A stretch of DNA of 64,000 nucleotides from Tubulanus polymorphus (taxonomy: Eukaryota > Animalia > Nemertea), in NCBI RefSeq assembly GCF_964204645.1, contig NC_134035.1:10696451-10760450 (forward strand), given 5' to 3'. A program made the translations under genes and the position numbers. A model generated the notes under the pieces. The model saw only the letters and a list, made by a program, of their open reading frames with translations, was not told where the DNA came from and made no database searches. Below are positions 25,082 to 64,000 of the stretch, in pieces (within the stretch, counting starts at the first letter, position 1; each line of letters starts with the position of its first letter).

Positions 25082-27916
25082 TCAGTTAGCACTCAGGAGA
25101 CGGAGTTTCATCGAACCAGATAGTCCACTGGATGAGGAAACACTATGTCCGAGCGCTTTACCAGTGGTTCTTCCACTGGTTCCACTCCCAGCTGGTGCGA
25201 TGACAAATACTCCGCTCGAAGTTTCATTATGCGTAGAATGATTTGAATTCGATCGAACATTATCAGCGATATTTGATGTCAAACCCTGTAATCCGACCGT
25301 CCCATACATGCTACTGTTAGATGAAGATGAATTGTAAATGTTGTTGAAATTACTTGAATTCTTACTCCAATTTCCTGTGTTATCAATACTCATGTAGCCG
25401 CCATACCCGTTTAAACTTATGTTCGACGATCCACTGCTTTGGTTATGTTTTCCGTTTCGCATCGACGGAAATGTAGGGTCTGATGGGATGTTGTTACCCA
25501 CCAGGCCGGTAGACGCTTTGCTACTTTTCCGTGCAAGGTAATTTCCGAATATTGTTCTTGATTCATTTGAAGATATGCGATTCGAAATATCTAGTTGACC
25601 TAATCCAGCAAACAGCTTTCCTTTGCTTCCAGATGAATTCGAGCTTCGGCCCAAACTGTAGAAACGGTTTCTTCCAGCCAAACTTTCGCGACCATTACCT
25701 AATTCATTGACAACATTTGATCGCTTATCGTTAACGTATACATCGAGACTTCCACTCGCATTTCGACTTTGTGATATATTTTGAGAAGAGATTTTAAATT
25801 TAGATTTTATTCTCAAATCATTGTTCGTATTGGATTTAAAGAATTTCCCAAGTATGTGTGAGCCGGCCTCTTTGCTTGTTCTCGAGCCCCAAGAGCCGCC
25901 AAGACCTCCTATTGTTGATGATCCATTCGTCGCTGAACTCTTAGTGTCAACTGTAGGAAAACCACTCGGTAATGTTGGTTTTCCTGATATCATTTCAGAC
26001 TGATCTTGTATTGAAGAAGAAACAGTTAAACTACCTTTATCAGATGTCTCTGTAGCCGGGGAGATTGTGGTTGAGGTGAATATATCGGTTTTAGGCCGAG
26101 TCGTGATGGATGATATCAGCCCAACTATCTTTGACCGAGAAGTGGCTGTTGCTGTAACTAGACCGGTAGTTACGGAGCCAGTAGTACTGGTAGAGATTAT
26201 CTCTGCATCCTTCGAGACTGTATTCGATTGCACGGTGCTCGTTGAAGTCCAATCCTGCAACGTAGCTCTATTTGTAGGCCGATTAGATGTATCCGTATAT
26301 ACTGTACCGGTCGTCGTCCTAGTCTTTGAACTAGTTGGATTATTTGTTGACGTAAAGACATTCGCTTCGCTGGACGAACTGGCCGGAGATGCTGTATTTG
26401 ACACATATACTACAGACTTAGTCGTAATTGTTTCGGGTATACGAGGTGAAGTAACTAATTTAGCGTTGTACTTCGGAGACTCATGTGATTTAGTCGTGGA
26501 CACAGTCGTGGCACTGAGTGAGGTCTTGCGAGGCATTGCGGTCGTCGAAGTCCTATAGTTATTATGGGCAGTACTCTTCGATGATGCGGTAGTAGTAGTA
26601 AGCATTTCAGAGGATGTAGCTGCTCTGGATGAAAATAAATGAGGTTCAGTTAGTTTCAAAGGCGATGATTCGTAGGGCTTTGTTGTAGATTCCGACTGAA
26701 AATCGATTGGTGACGCGCTATAGGAAGAAGTCCAAGCTGTCGATGTCATGCGTGTTGAATGACCGCTTGATGAACTCGTCGGAGTAGCAGACGTGGAGGT
26801 GCGTGTCGTAGAATACGATTCAGTACTCGACGATCTAACCGTTATACCAGAAGTCGATGTTCTAGGTATTTTTGAAGTGCTTGTTGTGAAAATGATCGTT
26901 GGCTTCGATGGCTTATTGTCACTGGATTTTGTTTGAAATTCATTGACCTTTGTCAGTGTTGGTGTATCGGGAAAAGGTGTAGTTGTTTTAGCCATACGTG
27001 CACTAGATGCTGATGTAGGCTGGGTATTTCTTGGTCTCCAGGAAGACCAAGCTGCATTTGTCCGGTAACGATAAAAAGGAGACGTCGTTGCATCTGCTTT
27101 GGAACGATATTTCCGGCCGTTCAAAATGGACATGAAATCCACGTTTACGCCTACATAACTATTGCTACTGGTCATCCGACGGCTTAACTCACCGAGAATG
27201 CGCTTGCTAATTCTAATAGAAATGTAGTTCAACATATCTTCTATCATTAACTGTAAAGTCGCCATGAGTCGCTTTGCTTCGCCTTTTCTTCTACAGAATT
27301 TTCTCATCGGGAATCTAGAGCGCAAGTATTCTGTGTAACTGTCAGTCATCTGTAACAGATTGTCGACGGGTCGAATGGATACGAATTCATCTAGGTACGA
27401 ATACCGACTGGTCAGTAGATCACCGTTCCTCAGGAAAACGTTCAAATCGAAATGTTCAAATCCGTGATCTGTTTTGGGTTTATTCCTTTTTCCGTCAAAA
27501 TCGTTGCCGACATGGCCACCAGGAGAGAATTTCTTGTGGAGGCCTTTGGTAACATCAACGTTAGCGCTTTTGTATGAACCGAAATTGAATTTGTAACCTG
27601 TTTTCCATCTATGCCTGCTATCAGCCTTGCTGCCGGATTTGGCAATAAACCGAGCATAGTACGGATGATCGTTGGATGAATCATCATTTTTCAATTGCCA
27701 CTGAAACGGTTCTCCGTCATCGTTATCGCCTTCGGATTTCTTCACGACCGCCACGTCAAATCGTCCATGTCTAAAACCTCCGATTTTCTTCGCAAACTGT
27801 TGAAAGTAGTTCTGTCTCACCTTGAACAACTGATTTATGGATAGACCAAGTTCGAACGACGCGAATAACAACAAAAACGTCGTCTTAGTTACCAGCAATA
27901 TCGACGCCGACGCCAT
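25082..27916 (-). CDS. Single-exon 944-aa secreted Ser/Thr-rich mucin-like protein of unknown family
   Basis: Uninterrupted 2.8-kb ORF in AT-rich DNA. Hydrophobic N-terminus (ILLVTKTTFLLLFASFELGLS), central T/S/P-rich tract, G/S/N-rich C-terminus. A pyrimidine tract plus CAG acceptor lies 8 nt before the ATG. Confidence 0.8.
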   Translation of the reverse strand: MASASILLVTKTTFLLLFASFELGLSINQLFKVRQNYFQQFAKKIGGFRHGRFDVAVVKKSEGDNDDGEPFQWQLKNDDSSNDHPYYARFIAKSGSKADSRHRWKTGYKFNFGSYKSANVDVTKGLHKKFSPGGHVGNDFDGKRNKPKTDHGFEHFDLNVFLRNGDLLTSRYSYLDEFVSIRPVDNLLQMTDSYTEYLRSRFPMRKFCRRKGEAKRLMATLQLMIEDMLNYISIRISKRILGELSRRMTSSNSYVGVNVDFMSILNGRKYRSKADATTSPFYRYRTNAAWSSWRPRNTQPTSASSARMAKTTTPFPDTPTLTKVNEFQTKSSDNKPSKPTIIFTTSTSKIPRTSTSGITVRSSSTESYSTTRTSTSATPTSSSSGHSTRMTSTAWTSSYSASPIDFQSESTTKPYESSPLKLTEPHLFSSRAATSSEMLTTTTASSKSTAHNNYRTSTTAMPRKTSLSATTVSTTKSHESPKYNAKLVTSPRIPETITTKSVVYVSNTASPASSSSEANVFTSTNNPTSSKTRTTTGTVYTDTSNRPTNRATLQDWTSTSTVQSNTVSKDAEIISTSTTGSVTTGLVTATATSRSKIVGLISSITTRPKTDIFTSTTISPATETSDKGSLTVSSSIQDQSEMISGKPTLPSGFPTVDTKSSATNGSSTIGGLGGSWGSRTSKEAGSHILGKFFKSNTNNDLRIKSKFKISSQNISQSRNASGSLDVYVNDKRSNVVNELGNGRESLAGRNRFYSLGRSSNSSGSKGKLFAGLGQLDISNRISSNESRTIFGNYLARKSSKASTGLVGNNIPSDPTFPSMRNGKHNQSSGSSNISLNGYGGYMSIDNTGNWSKNSSNFNNIYNSSSSNSSMYGTVGLQGLTSNIADNVRSNSNHSTHNETSSGVFVIAPAGSGTSGRTTGKALGHSVSSSSGLSGSMKLRLLSAN

Positions 27917-29181: not shown

Positions 29182-30597
29182 TCAGGTCACAATCGACGAC
29201 ATTGGTAACGATTCTTGCCTCGTCGAATGATTGTGTTGAACGAGCCAAAAATCGTCCAGAATCCGCGACGAAACACTTTCGACGCAAGTGTAACGTAGGT
29301 GCGTATCGTTGACCACTGCTAAACGCCCGAAGCTCTCAACACCGGCGACGGCGGATCTGAACGCCGACCATTCCGGTTTCGGGTTTACGGCGTCTTCGAA
29401 TACGTCCAAAAAGAACCACACAGCCGGTGAACCGTTGACGATATGAACGGGAGCTTTCGCGTCGACGTAGCTGTGACCGTACACGCTGAAATTGTAAACG
29501 GGCCACGATCGTTCGTACGAGTGCTCGTGACCGCTGACGATCAGGTCGACTCCCTGTTCGAAGAATAACCTCTCGACGCTCTCTCGAATGGCTGTTTGCA
29601 GACTGGAACAGTTCGTTTCGGGATTGATATAGTTCGAACAGTAGAGCGGTCGATGCCCGAATACTACTATCCACGGCCGCTGTTTGCGGTTCAGATTCGC
29701 TTTTTGTAAATCTTTGCGTAACCAGTCGTGCTGCTGTTTGATGTAGTGCGGTTGAAATTGGTACAGTTCCGTGTCGTAGAAAACAAAATGCGTTTTACCG
29801 AGATCGAAACTGTATCGCATTTCTCCCGTCGGAATCGGCCATTTCACGCCGGGCAAACTGAATCGATGTCGATAGTGTTTAAACAGCGATTGGTTTTCGT
29901 GATTGCCGGGAATCGTCAGGTATAACAGCTGGGACACGAGTGGCTCCATCTTGCGCATGAACGAGTCACCGTTCGGTTCGATATTATAGGCGATATCTCC
30001 CAGGTGTAGCACGGCGTCGTACGCTATCGATCGAAGTTGATATTCGTTCGTTAAAGCCTGCACGGTTTTTGAATGCACGCCGATGTCGCTGCCCACGAGT
30101 AAATTAACGATAGAATCGGCCGCGTTGTTAAACGTCCTGAACTGAAATACCGGCGAAGAATATCGATCCACGACCACTTTGTAGAAGTATATCGCGCCGG
30201 GAAGCAGTTTAGTCAATTCACATCTGTAAACATACGGAATGAAATACCCGGAATTGATCGAGTCTTCGATTTCTATCGTAACGGCTCGACATCTAGCTTC
30301 AAAACGCGCCGACTGCCTGCCGAACATAACGTATCCGCTACTGTCGATACGGCTCGTCCACATCACTACGACCTCGCTGTAATCAGAACCGGGTGAGATT
30401 CGGATTTGTTCCGGCCGCCCATCGACCAAACGTCGCAGAAGCTGTTTGCGATGTATCGCCGGCGCTAAATACCAGAGTAGAAACGTGCCGATTATAACGG
30501 CGATTATCACCAGTAACTTACGCGCGTACCTGCACGAGATGTAGTCATTGTTTTTAGTGTCCTGCCCGTCGGAAGAGATGACTTGATGTGGTGGCAT
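29182..30597 (-). CDS. ACP7: Purple acid phosphatase, ACP7/PAPL-like, intronless, with N-terminal membrane anchor (471 aa)
   Basis: All five purple acid phosphatase metal-ligand motifs in order: SDIG (DxG), GDIAY (GDxxY), GNHE, VFGH, GHEH. PEQI...V.W.T FN3-like N-domain and C-terminal APVHIVNG...WSAFR...FGRL.V.N.THL. TM segment LLVIIAVIIGTFLLWYL. Confidence 0.9.
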   Translation of the reverse strand: MPPHQVISSDGQDTKNNDYISCRYARKLLVIIAVIIGTFLLWYLAPAIHRKQLLRRLVDGRPEQIRISPGSDYSEVVVMWTSRIDSSGYVMFGRQSARFEARCRAVTIEIEDSINSGYFIPYVYRCELTKLLPGAIYFYKVVVDRYSSPVFQFRTFNNAADSIVNLLVGSDIGVHSKTVQALTNEYQLRSIAYDAVLHLGDIAYNIEPNGDSFMRKMEPLVSQLLYLTIPGNHENQSLFKHYRHRFSLPGVKWPIPTGEMRYSFDLGKTHFVFYDTELYQFQPHYIKQQHDWLRKDLQKANLNRKQRPWIVVFGHRPLYCSNYINPETNCSSLQTAIRESVERLFFEQGVDLIVSGHEHSYERSWPVYNFSVYGHSYVDAKAPVHIVNGSPAVWFFLDVFEDAVNPKPEWSAFRSAVAGVESFGRLAVVNDTHLRYTCVESVSSRILDDFWLVQHNHSTRQESLPMSSIVT

Positions 30598-33242: not shown

Positions 33243-36200
33243 TTAGTAGATCAAAAACGATAAATCAAAAACTACAACGACAAATAAGAAAATTACGAAC
33301 AACAGTCTTTCCAGAACGATATTAGCCGTATCGTAAAACGTGTCGTGCAATGTACTGGTGGGTGTCGTGGTCGGTGAACTGCTGGAGATTTCGCGGTCTT
33401 CGCCCAACTGATCGTCATCGTCCGCGCCGTCCGGAGCTAAACGACGAACTCGAATATCTGCCGTATCACGCCTGACCAACAACAACTTCTCCAAACACTC
33501 GGTAACCTATTTCAAAAAAGTACTATGAAAAACAACAACTACCTACACATTTATAGAGTTTATTGCGAATTAAAAGGCGGGCGTAGGTCGGCTTTACGAC
33601 TGCAAGCTACTCGTAATCGACCGACGCACCCTCACGACCATTACGAACACCAGCGATACCTTGTGCACTGCCATCATATTATACTTTCCGCGATGTTTGC
33701 GGCCGTCTTTCTGAGTCGCAACATATTCTCCTTTTGTAACTGAAGCCCAACGCACCCGACGCACGGAAACACGGAAGAATTCTTTCCCGAAACAATGTTA
33801 CCCGCGTTTCTCGTAGACGCACACGACTCCGGAAAACGCACGGAAACATTATGTCTGTCTCCAGCTCCAGTGTTTCCCTGCGTCGTGTGCGTTGGGCTCG
33901 ACAGCTGACGAACACGTCACAGTCGACCTACGCACCCGTATCGCGATGCAGCTTAGAAATAAAAAGAAGTTCATTACCTGCTGAAAAGATCTTGGCGGTG
34001 GCGATGTAAAGCTGATCCGCGCTGCCGATGACGTCAGGTGAGCAATCAAATAAGCAATCACAGTCAGCAACATCGAAGATACATAGTAAACATCTAGAAT
34101 TAAACATCATTTTATTTACTTGAAAACCACGAATGTAGACTATAAATTTTCTGACTGACACATCATCACTTTACGTCGTCACAATTAGTAGAAGATATGA
34201 ATGAATTCGAAGTGTCCAAAAACATCTTCATGAAAAAAAATATATGTATAAAATCTTAGAGGTGTTCGTGGAGCCTCGTTCGCCTTGGCTTTCTACGTTG
34301 ATCAATAAATGACACGATAAGCATAAACTCGATTTAGAAAAAGGTCTCATACGACAGTCCGATAATCACAGTCAAATCTAATTCAGCCTCGTAGTTAGGA
34401 GGATCGTTATGTCGATGATATAATGATGACTCATACTGCATTTAATATTTCCTTTGAAATGGTGTATTAATTAAGTTAATCAAGCAAGGGACTGCAGAGC
34501 TATTTGATATTCAATCAATACTTATGTTTTAAAAATGAGCGAAAATTATCGCAACAATGGGGACCTCGAGGGACCACCACAAAATGGCGCCTAGAAACTT
34601 TTTTATCAGTAAATTGGAAATACTACTTCGGACACACAGACCGGCTTCAATGATGCGACAACTCATCCCATGACGTGGGAGTTGAGACTGCACTCACGTA
34701 TAATCGGAGGTTCACCAGTCGCTGTTAGTTCTTTGTCCGCCCACCATCGAGTATCACGAGGAAACGACTTCATGCTCATCATAAACAGGAACAGGTAAAT
34801 GAGTATCATTCCGACAACTGTAACATGAACAGGTAAATGAGTATCATTCCAACAACTGTAACAGGAACAGGTAAATGAGTAGCATTCCAACAACTGTAAC
34901 ATGAACAGGTAAATGAGTATCATTCCAACAACTGTAACAGGAACAGGTAAATGAGTATCATTCCAACAACTGTAACAGGAACAGGTAAATGAGTATCATT
35001 CCAACATCTGTAACAGGAACAGGTAAATGAGTATCATTCCAACAACTGTAACAGGAACAGGTAAATGAGTATCATTCCAACAACTGTAACAGGAACAGGT
35101 AAATGAGTATCATTCCAACAACTGTAACAGGAACAGGTAAATGAGTATCATTCCAACAACTGTAACAGGAACAGGTAAATGAGTATCATTCCAACAACTG
35201 TAACAGGAACAGGTAAATGAGTATCATTCCAACAACTGTAACAGGAACAGGTAAATGAGTATCATTCCAACAACTGTAACAGGAACAGGTAAATGAGTAT
35301 CATTCCAACAACTGTAACAGGAACAGGTAAATGAGTATCATTCCAACATCTGTAACAGGAACAGGTAAATGAGTATCATTCCAACAACTGTAACAGGAAC
35401 AGGTAAATGAGTATCATTCCAACAACTGTAACAGGAACAGGTAAATGAGTATCATTCCAACAACTGTAACAGGAACAGGTAAATGAGTATCATTCCAACA
35501 ACTGTAACAGGAACAGGTAAATGAGTATCATTCCAACAACTGTAACAGGAACAGGTAAATGAGTATCATTCCAACAACTGTAACATGAACAGGTAAATGA
35601 GTATCATTCCAACAACTGTAACAGGAACAGGTAAATGAGTATCATTCCAACAACTGTAACAGGAACAGGTAAATGAGTATCATTCCAACAACTGTAACGA
35701 ATCATACACAATCAACAATATCAATTATTCGCCATAGTCGAATTTTTCTTCTGGATGAATTTGAGCGTGTATGTGATTGTGTGATTGTAGCAAAGTGTGT
35801 TGAGGTGACCCTTTTTACAAGCATTTTGTTTCGATTATTATTATACGATCATAACAGAATATTCAATCCATCGTCAACATCTGATATCTAAATAAATGCT
35901 AATGATCATTTTGATTTGTTATACGTGATGACAAACAACGATACGTTAATTTCATAAGAATGTTGCATTTAATCGATTAAAATCGCTCCTTAATCTTCCA
36001 AAAATCTTAATATTAATGCCAGAATTAGGTCGCCTCTGACCCAAACTCATCTCGGCGGTATCCTCCCTCGGCAGCCGTGGTTGATGCCATCAGGTTCGAA
36101 TCCTTGCCGAGGAAGGATGTTCGGTGGGCGACAAACAAACTCTCGGGCAAGTGAGGATGATACCTGTTATGTGACGAGCTGCAACACCGCGGCCACGAAA

Positions 36201-39200
36201 TAGAAAAAGCATCGGAATCATGAGATTCAGGCAGATCGCGGGCGCCACGAATACAAGAACTCCTCGCAGAAGAGATCTGCGTACGGTGAACTGGTACACG
36301 ATTGTCTCGGTCGTTTCACGGGTTTGCGTTGTTCGATTTCGCACCAGACGTTTGCCTTTTTCCAACAACCAGATGTCGGACGTTTTCTGAGGCAATTCTG
36401 GATACCGGGTGGCTATGATTCGCCAGGGTGACGCGTCCGACACGGCGTGTACGTTGTACTGAATTAGAAAATAGAAGATTTTTTCACTCATTTAGATTCA
36501 CAAACATATCAAAAATCTCTTCATCGGTAATTCAAAGCTTATCCGTTAAAATCACTGTCAATCAGAGGCCTGAAATATGCGACTGTACAAAAAGTCGTTT
36601 CTAGAAATAGACAAAGTAAAAATGAGCGTATGTAATGCTTGTATATGTTGGCGTACTACTTTGGCATTTCGGGGACGTAGTTGGGATTGTGACGTTGATA
36701 CCGATTTAGCTAACTTGGAAAAACCCAGGAAACTTTTAACTGAGAAAACTAGTTCATTTTGACTTAGCTAACTCTGAATAATCCTCAGAATTGAGGAAAT
36801 ATTTATTCCGAATTAAGAAACTTTGAATTTCGAAGATGAGTCACATTTAGAAATGATTCACTAGTTTTATTTCGAGTATCTAACTCTGTATAGACGTCAA
36901 CGTTTCTTCTTACGAAAACGACCGATGCAGGACGCTTCCGTATAATCATTCGAAATAGTTCACAAACGATAGAAACCTATACCTTTTGTTTAACGAGGTT
37001 ATCGTCGATCTCGACTGCTAGTTCACATTTGTGTACATCGAATGGAAATCGGTACTTGCTGATAGCGCAGTATATCGAATTCTGTAGCCAGTTGTTGAAA
37101 CGAACGACGCCGGACCGATCTACATGCGCGTACGAGTTCCCATAGCCGTACAGACTCGGTAGCCAGGAAAATCTATAACAAAGAAAAATGCAAAAGTATG
37201 ATATGATATGATTAATTTTCAAGTAAGATTTCTACAAAAAAAATTAATGAATAAGGAAATGCATTAAACGTGTATAATATTAAATGAGTTCCTGCTTTGA
37301 AGCAACATTTAGCTTATACAAGAAAGCAGCCCATGAAAGAGGACAAAATATACACGAGATGGAAATAAACGAAAGAAAACCGACATAATACGGATATGAT
37401 AACGACATACATGTACATAACAAATACACATACATCATACATATACATACATATACACATACAACCATACTTATACTTATAAATGTTTTTAAGTGATATT
37501 TCTTTATGATGCGTATTCACTATATATAGTAACTTGCATCCAATCCACGTGCAGTTGTAAATAGTCATGATTGGTTCATTTTTTATGTTTCCCCCAGTCG
37601 AAATACAGCTGAATCTGATTTTCTGGTTCGTATTTGAGGAGTCTTACTCACCCGTGTACTATCTGAAATTTGGGTTTCCAGATTTTTCCGATGGACAGCG
37701 AAACGGAGTCGATGGAGCCATACTTTTTTGGGTCCCACGAGAGTCTCGAATCTTTCCACACCTATTCGTACATGAAAATCGTACCCGCACGAATGAATAT
37801 GCGTTTTAGATATTTCAGCAGAAATGAAATGAGATGATGTTTCATTTGCTTGAACTTACTATCTCTACTTGACCTCTAGGCCAGACTAGACTGTAAGCAG
37901 GATTCTGGAATTCAGTACAATTTTCATAAGACACTCATTTAATCATATTTATCAGACTCTTATACTTTCAATTGAATCGCTCTTAATGTTTCGTTTTTGG
38001 TACGATACGTTAGGATATGATATCTGTTTTCTCCTATATCCAACTTAATACAAAACAAAAAGTCTTAACAGAATCATGGAGGGGACCACAGAGGAGCCTG
38101 GAGGCTGTAATCTATGGGACATAGACCTCTGTGAGAACAAATAAAACAATGACAAAAAGAAAAAACAAACTGACTTATGATAAATGAACAAATGAGTCAA
38201 GAGGTTGTGAAGTGAAAAATAAATAAAAGGAAAAGGTAGCACAAGACTGAATTATTTCAATACTTTAATACATCGATGTACTATCAATTCAAATGGTAGC
38301 ATAACGTATTATTTTTCAGAAGTAAGCATTATCATTTTTTTATACATAAGAAACTCGATAGCTGTTCTCGGTGAAATGCCTTACTTACCACTGCCGCTAT
38401 GGCCGCAATATCGATGCCCATTTTGATAGTGATTTTCTTGCCGAGGGGTTTATTCGGTTTAACGCCGATAGCTGGTCGTATGTTGGTCTCGTAGTCTTTC
38501 ATTAGATCCGTAATCAAACGATGTTTATCGTTGTAAAACTTTTTTTCTAAAGCACACAAGCGAAGAGTGCTAGAAGCATTTAGTACGTTCCAAAAAGAAT
38601 AATGAAGCGCGTCGATTAGATCAATCCAACTTAAGATTATTTTCTAATAGGGTAGGTGTGAGGAAAATATGGGAGGGTAAGTTTTTTTTGTTTTGTTGGA
38701 ACTGAACGGGGGTCTAGTAGCCCTCTCCGGAAAAAAATGATGCTCAGATATGGTTTTGATTCCCGTTGATATAACGAAGGTCTAAATAAATGAACAAAAT
38801 CTTATATATATATACTTGTATTAGATCGAGAAAGTTGTAAGAGGAAAACGTTTCTGTTTGATAATCTTTTAAAATAAAAAAAAACTATCGGAACTACGGT
38901 CCCGCATAGCTACAATACTACCCGAGTAACTTTCATGTACTTAAAAAATGTATGCGGAATTTTCTTACAACATTAAACATTTTCTGGAAGACCGTCTGTC
39001 ATGGGGTGAAGATTATATAATTCTAAAAAGTAAATATAGCTGCAAAGCAGCAATAATGGGTTTTTACTGGATAGCAGCATCACAAATATGCATATCTTTG
39101 GAAATTAAAAATTGAAATGTAAAAGAATGTTTATCGTCGGGGATTCGAACTTAATATGACTGATATAACTACGTCGTCAATGTAGTACATCACCTCAAAT

Positions 39201-41501
39201 ATATTGAACTTACAAATTACTTTCGATACGACAACGTGCGAACAAGCACTATGAGACTTTAAAAAAAACGGTTACTTAAATTGACCATATATAATAATTA
39301 ATATAAGATCAACGTCTGCAACAATTGGAAAGTCTTACGGGTTGCTGGGTTTGTTGTTGGTTCTGTTGTTTTCTGTGTAGGTGAAACTGTAGAACTTGGT
39401 TCCGTTGTAGTCTGTATAGACGGCGCTGACGTAGTTCTTGCCTTCGCGGCGACGTCTGGATAAAACAGTTTATGGTCTATTACCGAAACAACCGTCGAGC
39501 CGAGTGTCTATTGTTTTACTAAAGTTGAAATCGATTACACCTACCCGAACATAATGGTACGTTACAGTATTCCCAGCGTTTACCGGGATTCAGAGTATAA
39601 CACCACGGTCCTTCAGGTTCATTATCCGGGTTCCTACAGTAATTCTCCGCTGTTGTCTTATCGTCCAGCTTCGAATATAACCTGTGTTTATGCGGTGTTT
39701 GTCTATCCCAGCGCTGACATTTCCAACCGCTTCGTGTTTCGCTCGTTTCGCCGCGATATTCAGCGCCTTTTTTACTGGTTTTACATTCACAGAACTCTAT
39801 ATCGCAGTACTCCCAGCGTTTACCGGGATTCAGAGTATAACACCACGGTCCGTCCGGTTCATTATCCGGGTTCCTGCAGTAATTCTCCGCTGTTGTCTTA
39901 TCGACCAGCATCGAATATGCACTGTGATTATGCGGTGTTTGACTATCCCAGCGCTGACATTTCAAACCGCTTCGAGTCGTATTCGCTATGCCTTGATAAT
40001 CGCGACCTGTCCGTGTAGTTTTACATTCAGGAGCCATCCCCGGACAGAACCTTATATTACAGTACTCCCAGCGTGTATCGGGGTCCATCGTATAACACCA
40101 GGGTCCTAAAGGTTCATCATCAGGATTCCTGCAGTAATTGGAAGCTGTGCCCTGGTCGGAGAGCATATCGTAGCGGGTATGTTTATGAGGTGATTGAGAA
40201 TTCCAGGCTTGACACTTTTTACCAGATTTTGTTTGGCCCAAACGTCCTCTGTATTCTTTACCGGTTGTGGTAGTTTTACAAGTTTCACCTGATTAAAGTA
40301 AATGTATTATCTCTATAATCTGATTCTTTGAACTGCGAAGCAGCGATCATGGGTTTTCTGCCAATAATCGATCATTAAATTCTTCATTTTATTTTAGAAA
40401 TAAATCGATGCGTAAACTATTTTATCGTTCTGGACACTGATAACAACTTTGACGTACAGTAATTGAACTGGCTAACACAACGAAAAATATTTCGAAAACT
40501 ACGGTCGATCCAGAGTCTGACATTCTAAGACGTTTCCACGAAGCCATATCGCAGCGAAAACTGTCGATATGCTTTATGCTTTGATAAGAATGCTGACGAA
40601 CAGTGACCTACCGGCTCTAATACAAAACAGTTTCTACTCATTCTGCCTTAACTATTGACTATAAAATGATACTCGGGCTTTAATCCACATTCAAACCTCT
40701 TAGGAACAATATGTTCTTACGAGCAACGTTATACAACAAGAAACTTTCCAAGCCTATACATATCATTCAAAAGCCTTTAAAACCTATGCAAATGAATTTT
40801 AGACCCTCTGGGGGACGAACCGAGGAGTGAATCAAAATCAAGACACTCGGAATCTGTGGATATTGGGGTTAAAATCCTAGTAAATTCGGTAGATTTCCAA
40901 GAGCCATTGGCTTTAATTAACTTTTGGCGATTATCTGCTTCGAAAGGGGACGGAAAATGATGATTATATTAGTCCGGAGAAAAGCAATAGGGTTTTTGTT
41001 AAAAGTATATAGCCCATTTTAAAGTGTCTATTCTAAGACAATATGTCAGTCACGATAGACTCTGAAGCCTGTATGCGAAAGAAAGGGAAAATACAAAAGA
41101 TCGGTACCAAAATGAGTTCCGGGCTCGCTGTGGTTGCTGGGTTTCTTGCAACGTTGATGGAATAGGAATCTGATTATATTGGTGTACGCTAAGCGCAAAT
41201 CAATGACATAACTCCAAACATCGCCAATTCTAAACTGGCTTGAAGATGGGGTTGTGCGGCTCCAGTCGCTTCATATTGAAAGAAAGCAGGTTCACTTACT
41301 TGAAATTTAAGCCGAAAGCGGGGATTCAAAATTAACTATATTTTCCGTTTTCTTCGCATCCAGACGTTTTTAACCCCGCACAGAGCGCGTTGATGGCATC
41401 AAGTCTTTTCATCACAAACAACCTGTCAACTTACCTTCATCCTTGTCACATAAAGCATTAGTCAACAGCAACGTAAATGTAAACAGACATTGCAAAATCA
41501 T
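33243..41501 (-). CDS. Pentameric Cys-loop ligand-gated ion channel subunit (divergent nAChR-like) with three N-terminal kringle domains, 11 exons, 741 aa
   Basis: Exons 41501-41435 (signal peptide MILQCLFTFTLLLTNALC), 40288-39545 (3 kringles, NYCRNPD..P.GPWCYT), 39455-39339 (T/P/S linker), 38546-38389 (RLITDLMKDYETNIRP), 37904-37860 (45 nt), 37761-37652 (110 nt; VWKDSRLSWDPKKYGSI...IWKP), 37172-36983 (Cys-loop C-AISKYRFPFDVHK-C), 36458-36164 (YQFTVRR plus M1), 34817-34698 (M2), 34093-33978 (M3), 33506-33243 (M4, VLERLLFVIF). All junctions are GT-AG and in phase; total 2226 nt. Confidence 0.85.
33745..33897. mobile_element. MITE (family B) with about 27-bp TIRs GCCCAACGCAC[A/C]CGACGCA[C/G]GGAAACAC
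   Basis: Inverted termini are visible. Homologous pieces lie at 66-179 (ending GGGCTTAA) and 18427-18797 (interrupted by the Penelope-like palindrome). Confidence 0.65.
34537..34600 (+). repeat. Short interspersed repeat (family D)
   Basis: GAAAATTATCGCAACAATGGGGA.CTCGAGG.ACC.CC.CAAAATGG.GCCTAGAAACT recurs at 62676-62739 and, inverted and diverged, at about 15945-16004. Confidence 0.65.
34784..35698. repeat. Minisatellite of 24 x 38 bp (AACAGGAACAGGTAAATGAGTATCATTCCAACAACTGT) derived from the M2-exon acceptor of the ion channel gene
   Basis: 912 bp = 24 near-identical units. On the minus strand the unit reads GTTACAG|TTGTTGGAATGATACTCATTTACCTGTTCCT. Confidence 0.97.
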
Positions 41502-42052
41502 CTTCTTTTGTATGGACGTTTTTTTTAGAAAATCTCCTCGCGAACGCTCGACGCCTACTCGTCCAGCGCGATCAGCCACACTTCTACAGTTTGCCGAGTA
41601 TACGATTTTCTATGTCACAATCTATTAAGTGTATTACGGAAACAATATTCTATTGTTTGCGCTGGAATTTTATCATCCACTTTGAAACTGTGTAGGCCAA
41701 AGGGATCAGACATCTATATATAGTAAATAAGCAGCGTATATTCGAAATAAAAATCTCGCCCGATCGAGACATTAATGATTCTGAAGTTTTATAGTCTTAT
41801 GTCAGGAAATATTTTTTTTCTAGAATTAGAAAGTATTCATATATACAGCAATCTTCATCACCGTACCCGAGTCAGTGTATACACAAGTGATAAGGATGTA
41901 GCCCGTACAGAAAGTAAAACTAATGCGGTTGTTAGCGTTGATTGACTTCACGGTAGTAAAAGAGAAACGATGATCTTCGATAAGTCGGTAATTCGTATTC
42001 CTCGTTGGCGTCTTTGATTCGGTATCGGATACCGAATACTACACAGTACGTA

Positions 42053-59701: not shown

Positions 59702-62700
59702 TAAGGTATTCACAATTGAATGAAACTAACTACTAGCTTGAAGAATCATTTCGAAATGGGATTTTCTATACCGCGTTCGTTCCTTGGCTTCGACGTCTCA
59801 AACGCGATGTGTGCGCGGTCCATTCATACGAAAAATCACCACCATCGCTTCAGACTACTAATTGAATCGACGTCATCGGCGTTCGGACAAACACTGTAAA
59901 GGTCTCGAGGGCGATAAGTGGCTCAATTCGTCAGAACGCAGAGAGACGTTCATCAGCGGTGTTATTGTTTCCCGTCGGAAGACTAATGAACGTAAACACG
60001 ATCCCCCCGAAAAAACGCGACGACAAATTAGACGAATTCGGGGATTAACTCGTAAGACGCCGAATCGATAAAATTCACGATCATCTACGTCTTATAGAGA
60101 TCTTAAGCCCTTCCTTGTCCGAGGGAAAACGTAAATAACACGCCAAGACGCGCTACACGTTCGCGGACCTATCACGCGATATTGGCGCCGATCTGGTGTT
60201 TATAATTCGCGTTTGGTAACCATGGGCTCGGCTTATAAGACTGTATGGACACCGAACCTATCATACAAAAAAAAGATATTAGGAAGATACACGATAGATA
60301 AACATCTTCTTCTGAGATAACCGGAGACCGTATCAACGCGGGCTTATTCACGTCATTCATCCGAATCGCGATTGTTAATGTACATTTACACGAGATCATC
60401 TCGTAAACGAATAGCCGATCGACCTGCGGGGGAACAAGATTTCGCGTCGGCGTATCGCCCATTACGGCAATCCGAGGTCGTCTGTTTGTTTCTCTGGCGC
60501 GGTAATAATCCTGCTATAATAAGAGATACTGTTACTTATTTACGAGTTTACGCGGATTTCGTATAGGTTTGACTGCGGTAATGTCATGTCGCAGTAATGC
60601 ATTCGCACATGTAGATATATGTCCAAATTGGTACGAATGCTTTGTAAATCAAAACTGACTTCGTGCACGAAATAGTTACACAAAGATGCATTAGGCAAGA
60701 TAAGAAAGCCGCGTGAAAGATGGTATAAACGATTTTCAATGGGACTTCGTCTAATAATAGCCTTTTTATCGTATCGAGATGAAAAGAATATGTTCTCGTT
60801 TAAACCGATTTCACTTGTGATCCTCTGCAACAAAGATATCGACGTTGATTGAACCGCAGGGCTTTTCTGCGACCGATTACCTTCATGTTACTGTTAATAC
60901 GTAAACACAAGGGAAAATACCGCTTCATTTTGAGCGGAGATGCGCATCTTCCAGATTATAGGCTTACGTGTGTGTGTAAGATCAATCTAAACTTATTTCT
61001 CCAAGGTGGACTGAATGTCAAATTCAAAAGTAGGGTATAACAACAAGTCATTGACTGGGGAGCTTGACTTAATAAGGTGTCAACACTGAAGATCGAACGC
61101 ACACCGGATACGTTATAAGATTGCCGTCTTATACTCCTGCCCTTTCCGATAAACGCGGTAATTCAGTTTGACACGTTTAACCCGATTACAGAAACGCGGT
61201 CGCATTCGTTTGTCCGCTGTAGTTACGCAATCTCCGCTCGGGCAGAGCCTATCGAAATATAGTTATTATCTACAAGACGATGATTAGATTATGGTCTGTA
61301 TCGAAGAGCGTCGAGTTGCCTGGTTGTTGAATTGGGATAATCAGGTTGAAGCGGTACATGCACTTAATGATAAATTAATTACTGGTGAATCGCGCCACGG
61401 GCGTTGATTAAATGATCTTTCGTAAGATTGAAGCGAGATCACTGAGATCAAATTCAGCTACGTCATCAACACATCTTGAAGATTGGACGTTAAATGATAT
61501 CCATACGCGATAATGATCAGGATTATATGAAGTTGAAATTTGATGTTATTTACCTTCTATCAATTTGACCTCACGATCTGTGCAAAGTGCAAAGTACAAC
61601 GGGCTCAGATGTCATGAAAAAGTTTAAAGCTGAAACGGTTAAGATTGAAGTGTTACATTCGTTGAAAGCATGTCGGAACCACAAGCTATACCTTTGATAA
61701 TCTAGAACTTCTATATATGCTTTTGATCTTTAAATAGTGAATCCGCCCTGTTATTTATTTGATTGATCGATTAATTCTGCTTTGATTTGAATTTTGTGTC
61801 CCTTTCGCAACCCCCATGCCTGCCGCAAGAACGAAACACGGGGTTTGATTTTGAAATCGGAAATCGAAGTACAGATATAGTTGTGTGATCGGTGGTCGTT
61901 TCTACAGAATTTTTGATTAAATCGATGTATATGATTGGAAATTTCGGTTTCAGTTCAGTGAAACAATCTTACAACCAGCTTGAACCGGCAAGCGACTGGT
62001 TGGGGTTAACTTTGTTGGCTGCCTAATTTGATACATCAAGATTTGGTAATAGCATTACTATTATATAAGTTTGATGATCATTTCGTCCATTTTTATATTA
62101 TGGTCGTGCTCGCTGCTTATATACTGCGCAAGCTAAATCTCAGAGTCGAGATTTCATCGCATTTAGTTCAATTTGTCGAAGCGTGGCTCGACGCCTTAAA
62201 ACTACAACCGGTCGACTTCGTGCGAGTACGTTTTTCGTCCCCGCGTGTTGAGATCGACTAGCCTCAGGCCGGGATACAGCTTTGCAAATTCACCGTCATT
62301 CCCTTGTGTCAATTTACATCTATCAAAGCCAACACGGCTTCGACGTGTCGTTTGTTGTGCGCGAGTTCGTTTCGACTGATCTTCACCAGAAGATATGATT
62401 TTCGGAAGATTTTGGATGAATTAACGCGTGAACCTGATCTGACAGGTGATAGAAGCGGCTGCATCGAAATTCGATGAATTTAGACGCTTGACCACGAAGA
62501 CAAAGGGATGATCTTGCTACCGCCGTGTTTTTGAACCGTCGCAAACCAATGCGAGCTAATTTCTTTCAACTTCTCGCGATTAACCCGTCAAGGGAAAAGC
62601 GTGCTTGTCACTTTTTTTTCTGAGTAACCCTGAAAAATACCCGTTCTTCATAAACTCTTATTGATGTTGAAGCACGAGTGAAAATTATCGCAACAATGGG

Positions 62701-63642
62701 GATCTCGAGGAACCGCCGCAAAATGGTGCCTAGAAACTGTTCCAGAAAAAAACTTCATCTTTTACCAATACTTTTGTTTCAGATCTAAGGACTTAAGTCC
62801 TTGTCAAGAATAACAACTATCCATTAACGAGGTTTTTATAAGTAAAATATCAAGCGACGTCTCTGTGGAGATAGATCCACAGATAGATAGACTCGCAGAA
62901 ATGCAGGTGGATGAAACATTAGTTCACGCAAACCGACAACACATCTTTTCAGTAGTACTTACCGAGAGAACAATAAACGACGCGTTAGTACTTAGTGATT
63001 TCATATAATCGGAGGTTCATGCACCGGGCATGGCGTACACTGATTTTTGCTAGTGCGATTCAAGACACACGGGTCTTATCTTTGATGTAAGGTGTTGCAT
63101 TATACAATGACCTTCAACTTTGTTTCATCATAATTCAAGTTTACCATTTTGATAATCGACCATTCCCGCGCTCGAGGGACTTTTGCGAACGAGTCTATAA
63201 AGCCAACGGAATCTCATCTATATTGTTTAAGGTTTGCTTTGGAAGAATGGAAAAGAAGAAGCAGCCACTGGCGGACGTTGCCTTTCCGGGCCCAGGGGAG
63301 TCGAGCTCAGTTTGTACTGGTATATTCTATTTGTTGGAAGAACGGGGTCCGATGTCGAGTCTTTGTGTCGGTTGCTTCACCGAAAATCAAAAGCTTTTTA
63401 TAGAAAAGGAAAGACGATATATCGTAAATCAGTCGTCAACGACATTCATTGGCAAGTTATCGTAGATATCATCTATCCGATATTTGCCGTAAGAGATACA
63501 TTTCATCTAATTGTGGAATTCACCAGTTCGCCTTAGTGTGTTCGCATAACCACCTGAGGGTCGCAATTCAATGGAGTAATAAATGTACGCTAACAAGTAA
63601 GACACTTCTTTCGAATGTAAACTGATACGTAGATGAGGTATG

Positions 63643-64000
63643 AGGGAGGGAGGGAGGGATAGAGGGAGAGAGGGAGAGAGGGAGAGAGGGAGAGAGGGAG
63701 AGAGGGAGAGAGGGAGAGAGGGAGAGAGGGAGAGAGGGAGAGAGGGAGAGAGAGGGAGAGGGGGAGAGGGGGAGAGGGGGAGAGAGGGAGAGAGGGAGAG
63801 AGGGAGAGAGGGAGAGAGGGGGAGAGGGAGAGAGGGAGAGAGGGAGAGAGGGAGAGAGGGAGAGAGGGAGAGAGGGAGAGAGGGAGAGAGGGAGAGAGGG
63901 AGAGAGGGAGAGAGGGAGAGAGGGAGAGAGGGAGAGAGGGAGAGAGGGAGAGAGGGAGAGAGGGAGAGAGGGAGAGAGGGAGAGAGGGAGAGAGGGAGAG
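63643..64000. repeat. (GAGAGAGG)n polypurine repeat running off the window end
   Basis: Direct reading. Confidence 0.97.

What the first reader, a model, noticed from the sequence alone, without database searches (positions are those of the whole stretch)
33243..41501. Kringle-Cys-loop receptor fusion: an ion channel subunit with three plasminogen-type kringles on a mucin-like stalk
Seen: eleven GT-AG exons join in phase into one 741-aa ORF of signal peptide, 3 kringles, a 39-aa T/P/S linker, a pLGIC ligand-binding domain with a canonical Cx13C loop (FPFD), and M1-M4. The kringle exon is flanked by phase-1 introns, the channel part has no signal peptide of its own, and the 45-nt and 110-nt exons match the conserved nAChR gene layout. 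Established: animal Cys-loop subunits normally begin at the LBD helix, while kringles occur in plasminogen/HGF/tPA, ROR/MuSK and Kremen and spread by phase-1 exon shuffling. Inference: exon shuffling produced a channel whose homopentamer would display 15 kringles, a protein-sensing or matrix-tethered receptor architecture that I do not recognise as described.
Basis: partly seen in the sequence, partly recalled or inferred. Interest (0 to 1): 0.92.

Follow-up and report, generated by a model that had tools for sequence, protein, structure and literature searches.

The report
Kringle exon cassette inside receptor gene
A ribbon-worm (Tubulanus polymorphus) acetylcholine-receptor-like ion channel gene has acquired, in its first intron, a copied two-exon module encoding three kringle domains and a mucin-like linker. 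The module could splice in frame to give a kringle-tipped channel subunit, but no transcript shows that it does, and the public gene model skips it.

Summary
Eleven GT-AG exons on the minus strand join in phase into a 741-aa ORF: signal peptide, 3 kringles, T/P/S linker, Cys-loop ligand-binding domain, M1-M4.

The "fusion" is a roughly 1-kb two-exon cassette (kringle exon, 89-nt intron, linker exon). It is 82% identical in DNA to an internal cassette of a mucin/TIL gene on contig C9 (XP_074657426.1). It lies in the phase-1 intron between the channel gene's signal-peptide exon and its first ligand-binding-domain exon.

RefSeq models this gene (XP_074660426.1, "acetylcholine receptor subunit gamma-like", 454 aa) by joining exon 1 directly to exon 4, which skips the cassette. 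No 741-aa isoform is in the protein databases, and the only sequencing runs I could reach were DNA.

The cassette is unlikely to be dead:
- No stop or indel in 741 nt, and all 18 cysteines kept.
- dN/dS against C9 is 0.26; sister copies on C7 carry stops.
- It has no start, poly(A) signal or alternative partner exons of its own.

Inclusion in some transcripts is therefore likely (about 0.5) but unproven.

The channel part is a very divergent orphan. It has a 24-copy decoy-acceptor minisatellite at M2, and one contig from a second individual carries a frameshift allele.

The scan holds a sister note on this stretch and unchecked notes on other kringle mosaics in this genome.

The parts
41435..41501 (-). 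Exon 1: ATG plus signal peptide (MILQCLFTFTLLLTNALC/DKDE), donor AAG|GTAAGT, phase 1
   Evidence: It is the first exon of RefSeq XP_074660426.1. It is not part of the homology with C9.
39325..40313 (-). Copied cassette: about 25 nt of intron, the kringle exon, an 89-nt intron, the linker exon and about 15 nt of intron
   Evidence: 82% nt identity to G000:C9:16323129-16324073. The borders of the homology were read.
39545..40288 (-). Kringle exon, 744 nt, phase 1-1, three kringles with 18 Cys
   Evidence: Pfam Kringle 1.7e-73; plasminogen K1-K3 2.6e-102. dN/dS 0.255 against C9 with no indel. All 18 Cys are shared with C9.
39339..39455 (-). Linker exon, 117 nt, phase 1-1, 39 aa, T/P/S-rich (22 of the 38 whole codons)
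   Evidence: It differs from the C9 linker by indels of 9 and 21 nt, while the intron between the two exons has indels of 2 and 14 nt.
38389..38546 (-). Exon 4: N-terminal helix and beta1 of the ligand-binding domain; starts in phase 1. No ATG in its upstream open frame.
37860..37904 (-). 45-nt exon (NPAYSLVWPRGQVEI)
   Evidence: It is used in XP_074660426.1 and aligns to Torpedo gamma.
37652..37761 (-). 110-nt exon (VWKDSRLSWDP...)
   Evidence: Pfam LBD 1.4e-8
36983..37172 (-). Cys-loop exon (C-AISKYRFPFDVHK-C)
36164..36458 (-). Exon for beta8-beta10 plus M1. Very divergent: its only hit among 1.84 billion representative proteins is itself.
   Evidence: A contig from a second individual has a net 5-nt loss at 36365-36371.
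34784..35698 (-). Minisatellite, 38 nt x 24.1 copies, 98% alike, made of the M2 acceptor plus the start of the M2 exon. Each copy is a decoy acceptor that leads to a stop after 16 codons.
   Evidence: the lead came from the scan's note s1-492909
34698..34817 (-). M2 exon
33978..34093 (-). M3 exon
33243..33506 (-). Last exon: short intracellular loop, M4 and the stop codon
38660..39285 (.). Two dispersed repeats (38660-38865 and 39019-39285) that fill much of the intron between the linker exon and exon 4
   Evidence: 260 first-look candidates in the genome; depth peak

Best explanation
This is a fast-evolving, nAChR-type (non-alpha, 'gamma-like') Cys-loop receptor gene of the palaeonemertean Tubulanus polymorphus. 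A roughly 1-kb two-exon cassette was copied by DNA-level duplication into its first intron, a phase-1 intron that follows the signal-peptide exon. The cassette encodes three plasminogen-type kringles and a T/P/S-rich linker, and both exons are phase 1-1. It came from the same family as an internal cassette of a mucin/TIL-type secreted protein gene on contig C9.

Because every border is phase 1, two in-frame mRNAs are possible. One is the conventional 454-aa subunit (exon 1 to exon 4, the RefSeq model). The other is a 741-aa subunit that carries the kringles on a probably O-glycosylated stalk, N-terminal to the alpha1 helix at the outer top of the extracellular domain.

I infer that the cassette is spliced in at least in some transcripts. 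It has been kept as intact coding sequence, and it has no start, no terminator and no other partner exons of its own.

Shown: the anatomy, the insertion, the source family, and coding constraint on the cassette. Inferred: inclusion in mRNA, and any role of the kringles such as protein or lysine binding, tethering or modulation.
For: Anatomy and phases:
- Exons, borders and phases.
- Domains.

The cassette is a copy:
- Homology with C9 covers only the cassette, including its internal intron, at 82% nt.
- On C9 the kringle exon is an internal exon of XP_074657426.1, a TIL + Kringle protein.
- Exon 1 belongs to the channel gene: XP_074660426.1 joins it to exon 4.

Coding constraint on the cassette:
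- 741 nt without a stop or indel at dS 0.43; dN/dS 0.255.
- All 18 Cys shared with C9.
- Under neutral drift at the lineage's own synonymous distance (about 0.12), P(no stop) is at most about 0.03, and below 0.001 with all Cys kept.
- Sister copies on C7, at similar distance, carry TGA/TAG stops and a lost Cys.
- The internal intron took indels of 2 and 14 nt, while the linker exon took only 9 and 21 nt.

No independent way to be expressed:
- The kringle exon starts in phase 1 without an ATG.
- There is no AATAAA or ATTAAA on this strand between the kringle exon and exon 4.
- There is no convincing alternative signal exon.

Splice sites of the cassette are good..TTTAATCAG|G, G|GTAGGT..TTTTATCCAG|A, C|GTAAGA.
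Against: - No RNA evidence. The three holder runs are DNA, with contigs running through introns and no splice joints. The one possible RNA run holds nothing of the locus.
- The only public model skips both cassette exons. No 741-aa isoform, and no 136-432-aa product with this kringle exon, is in the 5.8-billion-protein collection.
- Lineage-specific counts are weak: C11 has 11 synonymous and 21 non-synonymous changes, omega about 0.5, p = 0.05. They do not differ from the C7 stem lineage, which ended as pseudogenes.
- The insertion could be younger than the C9/C11 divergence if the true source copy has been lost.
- The phase compatibility is inherited from the source, so it is not evidence of selection here.
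- The channel part shows possible decay: a decoy-acceptor minisatellite at M2, and a net 5-nt deletion in the M1 exon in one contig of a second individual.
Confidence: 0.5

Rival explanations
1. Silent passenger. The cassette is never spliced in. It is an intronic copy of exons from another gene, and the only product is the conventional 454-aa subunit.
For: The RefSeq model XP_074660426.1 skips it. No product containing it is on record. Other copies of the same cassette on C7 are dead. The C7 stem lineage shows a similar omega of about 0.44 although it ended as pseudogenes.
Against: The ORF is intact, there is no indel in 741 nt, all 18 Cys and all four splice sites are kept at dS 0.43 from the nearest copy, and the neutral simulation gives P at most 0.03. 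To survive, this reading needs a recent insertion from a source copy that is no longer in the assembly (one search finds none closer than 82%).
Confidence: 0.2
2. Two products from one promoter. Exon 1, the kringle exon and the linker exon make a short secreted three-kringle protein that runs on past the linker donor (tail RKTFQLLQTLILY, then stop) or past the kringle donor (tail RCNRFQL, then stop). The channel is made only by skipping the cassette.
For: Read-through of either donor reaches a stop within 8-13 codons. Many stand-alone 'plasminogen-like' kringle proteins of 161-368 aa exist in this species. This reading would explain constraint on the cassette without a fusion.
Against: There is no canonical poly(A) signal on this strand in the 1 kb between the kringle exon and exon 4. 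No protein of 136-432 aa with this exon is annotated. Both donors are consensus-like.
Confidence: 0.15
3. Decaying locus. The channel gene is losing function in this species, whatever the splicing, so any fusion has no physiological meaning.
For: A contig of run X2 (second individual, word depth 26) lacks a net 5 nt inside the M1 exon at 36365-36371. That shifts the frame before M1. A 24-copy, 98%-alike array of decoy acceptors sits directly on the M2 acceptor. The M1 exon has no detectable relative among 1.84 billion representatives. Pfam Neur_chan_memb is not detected. There is no acidic -1' residue and no loop-B Trp.
Against: The reference haplotype keeps a 1365-nt ORF over nine exons with all GT-AG sites, although it is only 25-28% identical to any other receptor. 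Neutral decay would not leave that. The Cys-loop, the pre-M1 RR, the M1 Pro and four hydrophobic helices in the right order are all kept. Segregating null alleles are common in fast-evolving receptor families (my own knowledge). The deletion rests on one contig of one run.
Confidence: 0.15

Closest known systems
Nicotinic-type Cys-loop receptor subunits, non-alpha class (Torpedo/vertebrate muscle gamma, beta, epsilon)
   Same: The LBD plus M1-M2 align to Torpedo gamma at E 3.4e-12. C-x13-C with FPFD. Four transmembrane helices. Exon sizes of 45 and 110 nt are typical of nAChR genes (my own knowledge of vertebrate nAChR gene structure). RefSeq's name is 'gamma-like'.
   Different: Only 25-28% identity to any known subunit. 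Asp at the loop-B Trp position, no loop-C Cys pair, Ala rather than Glu/Gln at -1' of M2, and a 12-residue insertion in the M2-M3 loop. It also carries the kringle cassette in intron 1.
Orphan or re-purposed lophotrochozoan nAChR-like receptors: octopus chemotactile receptors (PDB 8EIS, 9E6B) and Alvinella Alpo4 (PDB 8BX5; PMC10338036)
   Same: These are among the best solved matches (E 4e-11 to 4e-8). They are divergent nAChR-family members from lophotrochozoans that have lost canonical ACh-site residues.
   Different: None of them carries an extra N-terminal domain. No ligand is known here.
Prokaryotic pLGICs with an accessory N-terminal domain (DeCLIC; PMC9897478, PMC12664993)
   Same: An extra folded module sits N-terminal to the ligand-binding domain of a pentameric channel. 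In DeCLIC the N-terminal domain modulates gating.
   Different: Those are bacterial, with unrelated N-terminal folds, and the domain is constitutive. Here it is an animal Cys-loop receptor, with kringle modules on a flexible mucin-like stalk, possibly as an optional cassette. Jaiteh et al. 2016 (PMC4795631) say that association of the pLGIC architecture with other domains had been evidenced only at genome level.
Kringle-bearing mosaic proteins spread by phase-1 exon shuffling (plasminogen, HGF, apolipoprotein(a), ROR, MuSK, Kremen)
   Same: Three kringles align to plasminogen K1-K3. The module is symmetric, phase 1-1. Insertion behind a signal-peptide exon is the classic shuffling site (established knowledge, Patthy).
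   Different: Three kringles lie in one exon here, with K2/K3 a recent tandem duplicate. There is no protease, PAN or kinase partner. The recipient is an ion-channel gene.
C9 gene LOC141910631 (XP_074657426.1, partial) of the same genome
   Same: Sister copy of the cassette: 81% aa and 82% nt identity, the same exon borders, the same short intron and the same type of linker.
   Different: On C9 the cassette is internal to a secreted protein of C8/TIL-like Cys-rich modules and long T/P-rich mucin exons. No channel exons are nearby.

Membership tests
Cys-loop receptor / pLGIC (Pfam Neur_chan_LBD + Neur_chan_memb) | Extracellular ligand-binding domain of the Neur_chan_LBD type | tested here: met
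   PF02931 at 1.7e-24, covering profile positions 2-215 of 216, on XP_074660426.1. Exon-wise hits.
Cys-loop receptor / pLGIC (Pfam Neur_chan_LBD + Neur_chan_memb) | Signature disulfide loop C-x13-C with the (F/Y)PFD core | tested here: met
   C-AISKYRFPFDVHK-C in exon 37172-36983.
Cys-loop receptor / pLGIC (Pfam Neur_chan_LBD + Neur_chan_memb) | Four transmembrane helices M1-M4 after the LBD, with M2 lining the pore | tested here: inconclusive
   Pfam PF02932 is not detected at E <= 0.01. M1-M2 do align to Torpedo gamma, and M1-M4 align to fish beta4. AlphaFold2 gives helices at 253-275, 282-306, 327-354 and 417-453 with pLDDT 67-79, but the whole model is poor (mean 41).
Cys-loop receptor / pLGIC (Pfam Neur_chan_LBD + Neur_chan_memb) | Forms a ligand-gated pentameric channel | not testable with these tools
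   Needs expression and electrophysiology. A pentamer exceeds the size limit of complex prediction.
Acetylcholine-binding (alpha-type) nAChR subunit | Loop-B Trp and the loop-C vicinal Cys pair | tested here: not met
   Asp stands at the loop-B Trp column, and there is no CC in loop C. It is therefore not filed as an ACh-binding alpha subunit.
Kringle domain (PF00051) | About 80-residue module with six Cys in the 1-6, 2-4, 3-5 pattern and the NYCRNPD...GPWC core | tested here: met
   Three domains, 243 bits in total against a cut-off of 34.3. 18 Cys. Alignment to plasminogen K1-K3.
The only runs found were DNA. The public model lacks the cassette.
Exon-shuffling insertion (symmetric module in an intron of matching phase) | The module has a sister copy elsewhere, homology is confined to the module with minimal intron flanks, and the recipient intron has the same phase | tested here: met

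The most novel reading that the evidence does not exclude
The 741-aa isoform is really made. That would be an animal Cys-loop receptor subunit displaying three plasminogen-like kringles on an O-glycosylated stalk above its ligand-binding domain. The kringles keep the NPDDE/NPDNE acidic motif, GPWCY and RWEYC; I recall these from plasminogen kringles as forming the lysine-binding pocket, which I did not test here. They could dock the channel to a protein or matrix partner, or pass protein binding on to gating. It would be a protein-sensing pLGIC born by an exon-shuffling event whose source copy is still identifiable in the same genome.
Probability: 0.3. Interest if true: 0.8.

Novelty: new variant of a known kind. 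Interest (0 to 1): 0.55.

Why it matters
Animal Cys-loop receptors are regarded as architecturally fixed: signal peptide, ligand-binding domain, four helices. Accessory N-terminal domains are known in bacterial relatives, and only one of those (DeCLIC) has been solved.

This locus shows, at DNA level, a module from a secreted mosaic protein dropped exactly where it could extend such a receptor. Both the source copy and decayed sister copies are still in the same genome. It is therefore a clean, datable example of Patthy-type phase-1 exon shuffling, caught between "inserted" and "proven functional".

If the long isoform exists, it would be the first animal pLGIC with a protein-binding ectodomain module. 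It would also be an easy system for testing how N-terminal appendages affect assembly and gating.

If it does not exist, the locus still shows how intact foreign exons can sit in a receptor gene's intron, and how easily a sequence-only reader can over-join them.

Tried and rejected
RNA evidence
- One search for sequencing runs with the kringle exon found three holders, all DNA-like, and one possible RNA run from 2015 with none of the words.
- Laying them on 35750-41650 gave no splice joint. This is no evidence against expression.

Relatives of the channel
- The M1 exon against 1.84 billion representatives returned only itself.
- XP_074660426.1 against 5.8 billion proteins gave only four fish beta4 subunits at E about 1e-4.
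- So there is no orthologue to date the insertion or to measure dN/dS on the channel part.

Paralogues
- There is no second copy of the channel exons in the genome.
- No other place has kringle and LBD hits within 20 kb of each other.

Other look-ups
- The look-up of encoding contigs on P0001: nothing on record.
- Literature: no paper holds 'kringle' with 'Cys-loop' or 'Neur_chan_LBD', and the 8 papers that hold 'kringle' with 'ligand-gated ion channel' are unrelated.
- AlphaFold2 of the 454-aa form with a 5-row alignment: mean pLDDT 41, extracellular domain unfolded. No fold search was run on it.
- tRNA scan of a high-copy element at about 35950-36140 whose sequence looks like a tRNA T-arm: no tRNA called.

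Rejected exon choices
- A rival 78-nt exon (38043-37966) in place of the 45-nt exon: rejected by the Torpedo alignment and by the RefSeq model.
- An alternative signal exon at 39080-38993 (MLLSSKNPLLLLC...): it lies inside a dispersed repeat and has a poor donor, GTCTTC.

Left out
- Any search, fold or complex prediction with the joined 741-aa model.

Full report
WHAT IS THERE

The window is G000:C11:10696451-10760450 of a 268-Mb animal genome. The only database protein that matches the locus names the species: XP_074660426.1, 'acetylcholine receptor subunit gamma-like [Tubulanus polymorphus]', a palaeonemertean.

Eleven exons, all with AG...GT borders, give 2226 nt, 741 codons and a single terminal stop.

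- Exon 1 (41501-41435) is an ATG plus a good signal peptide. It ends in phase 1 at AAG|GTAAGT.
- Exon 2 (40288-39545, 744 nt, phase 1-1) holds three kringles: Pfam 1.7e-73 and plasminogen K1-K3 at 2.6e-102.
- Exon 3 (39455-39339, 117 nt, phase 1-1) encodes a 39-aa T/P/S-rich linker.
- Exons 4-11 encode a complete Cys-loop subunit: the N-terminal helix, the 45-nt and 110-nt exons, C-x13-C with FPFD, and M1 to M4.

I computed the joined translation only locally, to check the frame. Following the operators' rule I searched the model exon by exon, by reference, and left out every search or fold of the joined 741-aa sequence.

HOW IT AROSE

The kringle exon has a close sister on contig C9 (81% aa). 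At DNA level the homology is 82% over about 950 nt. It runs from about 25 nt upstream of the kringle acceptor, through the exon, the 89-nt intron and the linker exon, to about 15 nt past the linker donor. Nothing else in the window matches C9. In particular, exon 1 and the channel exons do not.

On C9 the cassette is internal to a secreted mosaic gene, XP_074657426.1, which is partial and carries TIL + Kringle. Upstream of it lie C8/TIL-like Cys-rich exons. Downstream lie long T/P-rich mucin exons and further VWD/C8/TIL-like exons. The T/P linker therefore fits the C9 setting, which makes the C9 family the likely donor and the channel gene the recipient.

Further partial copies on C7 carry in-frame TGA/TAG stops and a Cys-to-Phe change.

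The genome has at least 125 kringle matches. Its annotated kringle proteins pair the domain with WSC, TIL and other modules. The scan's own unchecked notes list more kringle mosaics in this genome. Kringle exons are evidently mobile in this lineage.

WHOSE SIGNAL PEPTIDE

An exhaustive HMMER search with the M1 exon over 1.84 billion representatives returned one protein, P0001 = XP_074660426.1, 454 aa.

Since 741 - 248 - 39 = 454, skipping the cassette is also in frame. Together with the limits of the C9 homology, this means exon 1 is most simply the channel gene's own signal exon, and the cassette landed in its phase-1 first intron.

IS THE CASSETTE ALIVE

Against C9:
- The 741 nt of whole kringle codons show dS 0.425, dN 0.108 and omega 0.255, with no indel.
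- All 18 Cys are shared.
- The 89-nt intron inside the cassette took indels of 2 and 14 nt. The linker exon differs only by 9 and 21 nt. I cannot say on which lineage those indels fell.

A three-lineage count over K1-K2 gives the following.

| Lineage | Synonymous | Non-synonymous | omega | p |
|---|---|---|---|---|
| C11 (this window) | 11 | 21 | about 0.5 | 0.05 |
| C9 | 11 | 15 | about 0.36 | 0.01 |
| C7 stem | 10 | 17 | about 0.44 | 0.04 |

These counts alone do not separate C11 from a lineage that later died.

The stronger argument is that the sequence is intact. With the C11 lineage's own synonymous distance (about 0.12), a neutral simulation keeps the frame stop-free in at most about 3% of runs, and keeps all Cys as well in fewer than 0.1%. 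The two C7 copies differ from each other at omega 0.82.

The caveat is that the insertion could be younger than the divergence if the true source was lost. No copy closer than 82% exists in the assembly.

IS IT JOINED TO THE CHANNEL

Points in favour:
- The kringle exon begins in phase 1 and has no ATG of its own.
- The only upstream exon with a start and a phase-1 donor is exon 1.
- Downstream there is no AATAAA or ATTAAA on this strand before exon 4, and no convincing alternative signal exon for the channel.
- The intron between the linker exon and exon 4 is largely two dispersed repeats.
- All four cassette splice sites are consensus-like.

Points against:
- There is no transcript evidence of any kind. 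The three holder runs cover introns evenly and show no splice joints, so they are DNA. A possible RNA run from 2015 holds nothing of the locus.
- The RefSeq model omits the cassette.
- The protein collections hold no 741-aa isoform (query window 250-795 aa), and no 136-432-aa product with this exon.

I put inclusion in at least some transcripts at about 0.5. The rivals are never-included at about 0.2, and a separate short secreted kringle product at about 0.15. The view that the locus is decaying, at about 0.15, overlaps with the others.

THE CHANNEL PART

It is an orphan. It is 25-28% identical to its best database relatives and has no paralogue in the genome. Its best solved matches are Torpedo gamma and beta subunits, octopus chemotactile receptors and Alvinella Alpo4.

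- It is of the non-alpha type, with Asp at the loop-B Trp column and no loop-C Cys pair.
- M2 has Ala rather than Glu/Gln at -1', and a hydrophobic 9' that is Ile or Leu depending on the register.
- The M2-M3 loop has a 12-residue insertion.
- Its ligand, ion selectivity and ability to form homopentamers are unknown.

Two features caution against assuming full function:
- A 38-nt x 24.1-copy, 98%-alike array repeats the M2 acceptor and the first 31 nt of the M2 exon (lead from note s1-492909). Each decoy acceptor would give ...VVGMILIYLFLLQLLE-stop.
- One contig of run X2, from a second individual at word depth 26, lacks a net 5 nt at 36365-36371 inside the M1 exon. That shifts the frame before M1.

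On the other side, a 1365-nt ORF kept over nine exons at this degree of divergence is not what neutral decay leaves behind.

COMPARISON AND NOVELTY

By LBD and Cys-loop it is a member of the Cys-loop receptor family. The transmembrane domain is supported by alignment and predicted helices but not by Pfam. It is not an ACh-binding alpha subunit.

Accessory N-terminal domains are known in bacterial pLGICs (DeCLIC; PMC9897478, PMC12664993). In 2016 Jaiteh et al. (PMC4795631) noted that such associations had been evidenced only at genome level. I found no paper linking kringles with pLGICs. I could not query domain-architecture databases.

I rate it a new variant of a known kind. It is a well-documented exon-shuffling insertion whose protein-level outcome is open.

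Noticed in passing
window 34784-35698 (minus-strand gene, intron 8 / start of the M2 exon): A 38-nt minisatellite, 24.1 copies at 98% identity, made of the M2 acceptor plus the first 31 nt of the M2 exon. Each copy offers a decoy 3' splice site that would lead to a stop after 16 codons.
   Followed up: partly
window 36365-36371 (M1 exon): In run X2 (second individual, sample S2) the only contig over this place lacks 4 + 1 nt and has C>T at 36369. That is a net 5-nt loss, which would shift the frame before M1. It rests on one contig of one run. The cassette exons showed no differences in the parts that were covered.
   Followed up: no
G000:C7:6623755-6657233 (loci L003-L006): An inverted pair, plus fragments, of kringle K1-K2 copies from the same cassette family. 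They are 83-86% nt identical to the window, with in-frame TGA/TAG stops and a lost Cys. The two long copies differ from each other at dS 0.036 and omega 0.82, as pseudogenes would.
   Followed up: partly
G000:C9:16315500-16331000 (L001, L002): A large secreted mosaic gene (XP_074657426.1 is a partial model of it): C8/TIL-like Cys-rich exons, a T/P linker, three kringles, about 200 aa of TTEP-type mucin repeats, then further VWD/C8/TIL-like exons. It appears to be under-annotated.
   Followed up: partly
window 39565-40029: Kringles 2 and 3 form a 240-nt tandem duplicate, 85% alike. C9 shares it, so the triplication predates the cassette's spread.
   Followed up: no
window 35947-36143, 37129-37325, 38660-38865, 39019-39285: High-copy dispersed repeats lie inside the gene's introns, with k-mer depth up to 2400 against about 34. 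The element at about 36100 contains a tRNA T-arm-like GGTTCGAATCC on the plus strand, but ARAGORN calls no tRNA. It may be a tRNA-derived SINE.
   Followed up: partly
window 25082-27916 (-) and 29182-30597 (-): Two long single-exon ORFs lie downstream on the same strand. One is a 944-aa secreted Ser/Thr-rich mucin-like protein. The other is a 471-aa protein with metallophosphoesterase / purple-acid-phosphatase-like motifs (GDIAY, GNHE, GHEHSYER).
   Followed up: no
window 6001-8000 and 62001-64000: Local composition outliers: GC 0.48 with GC skew -0.34, and GC 0.46 with GC skew +0.27. The window's background is GC about 0.39 with skew near 0.
   Followed up: no
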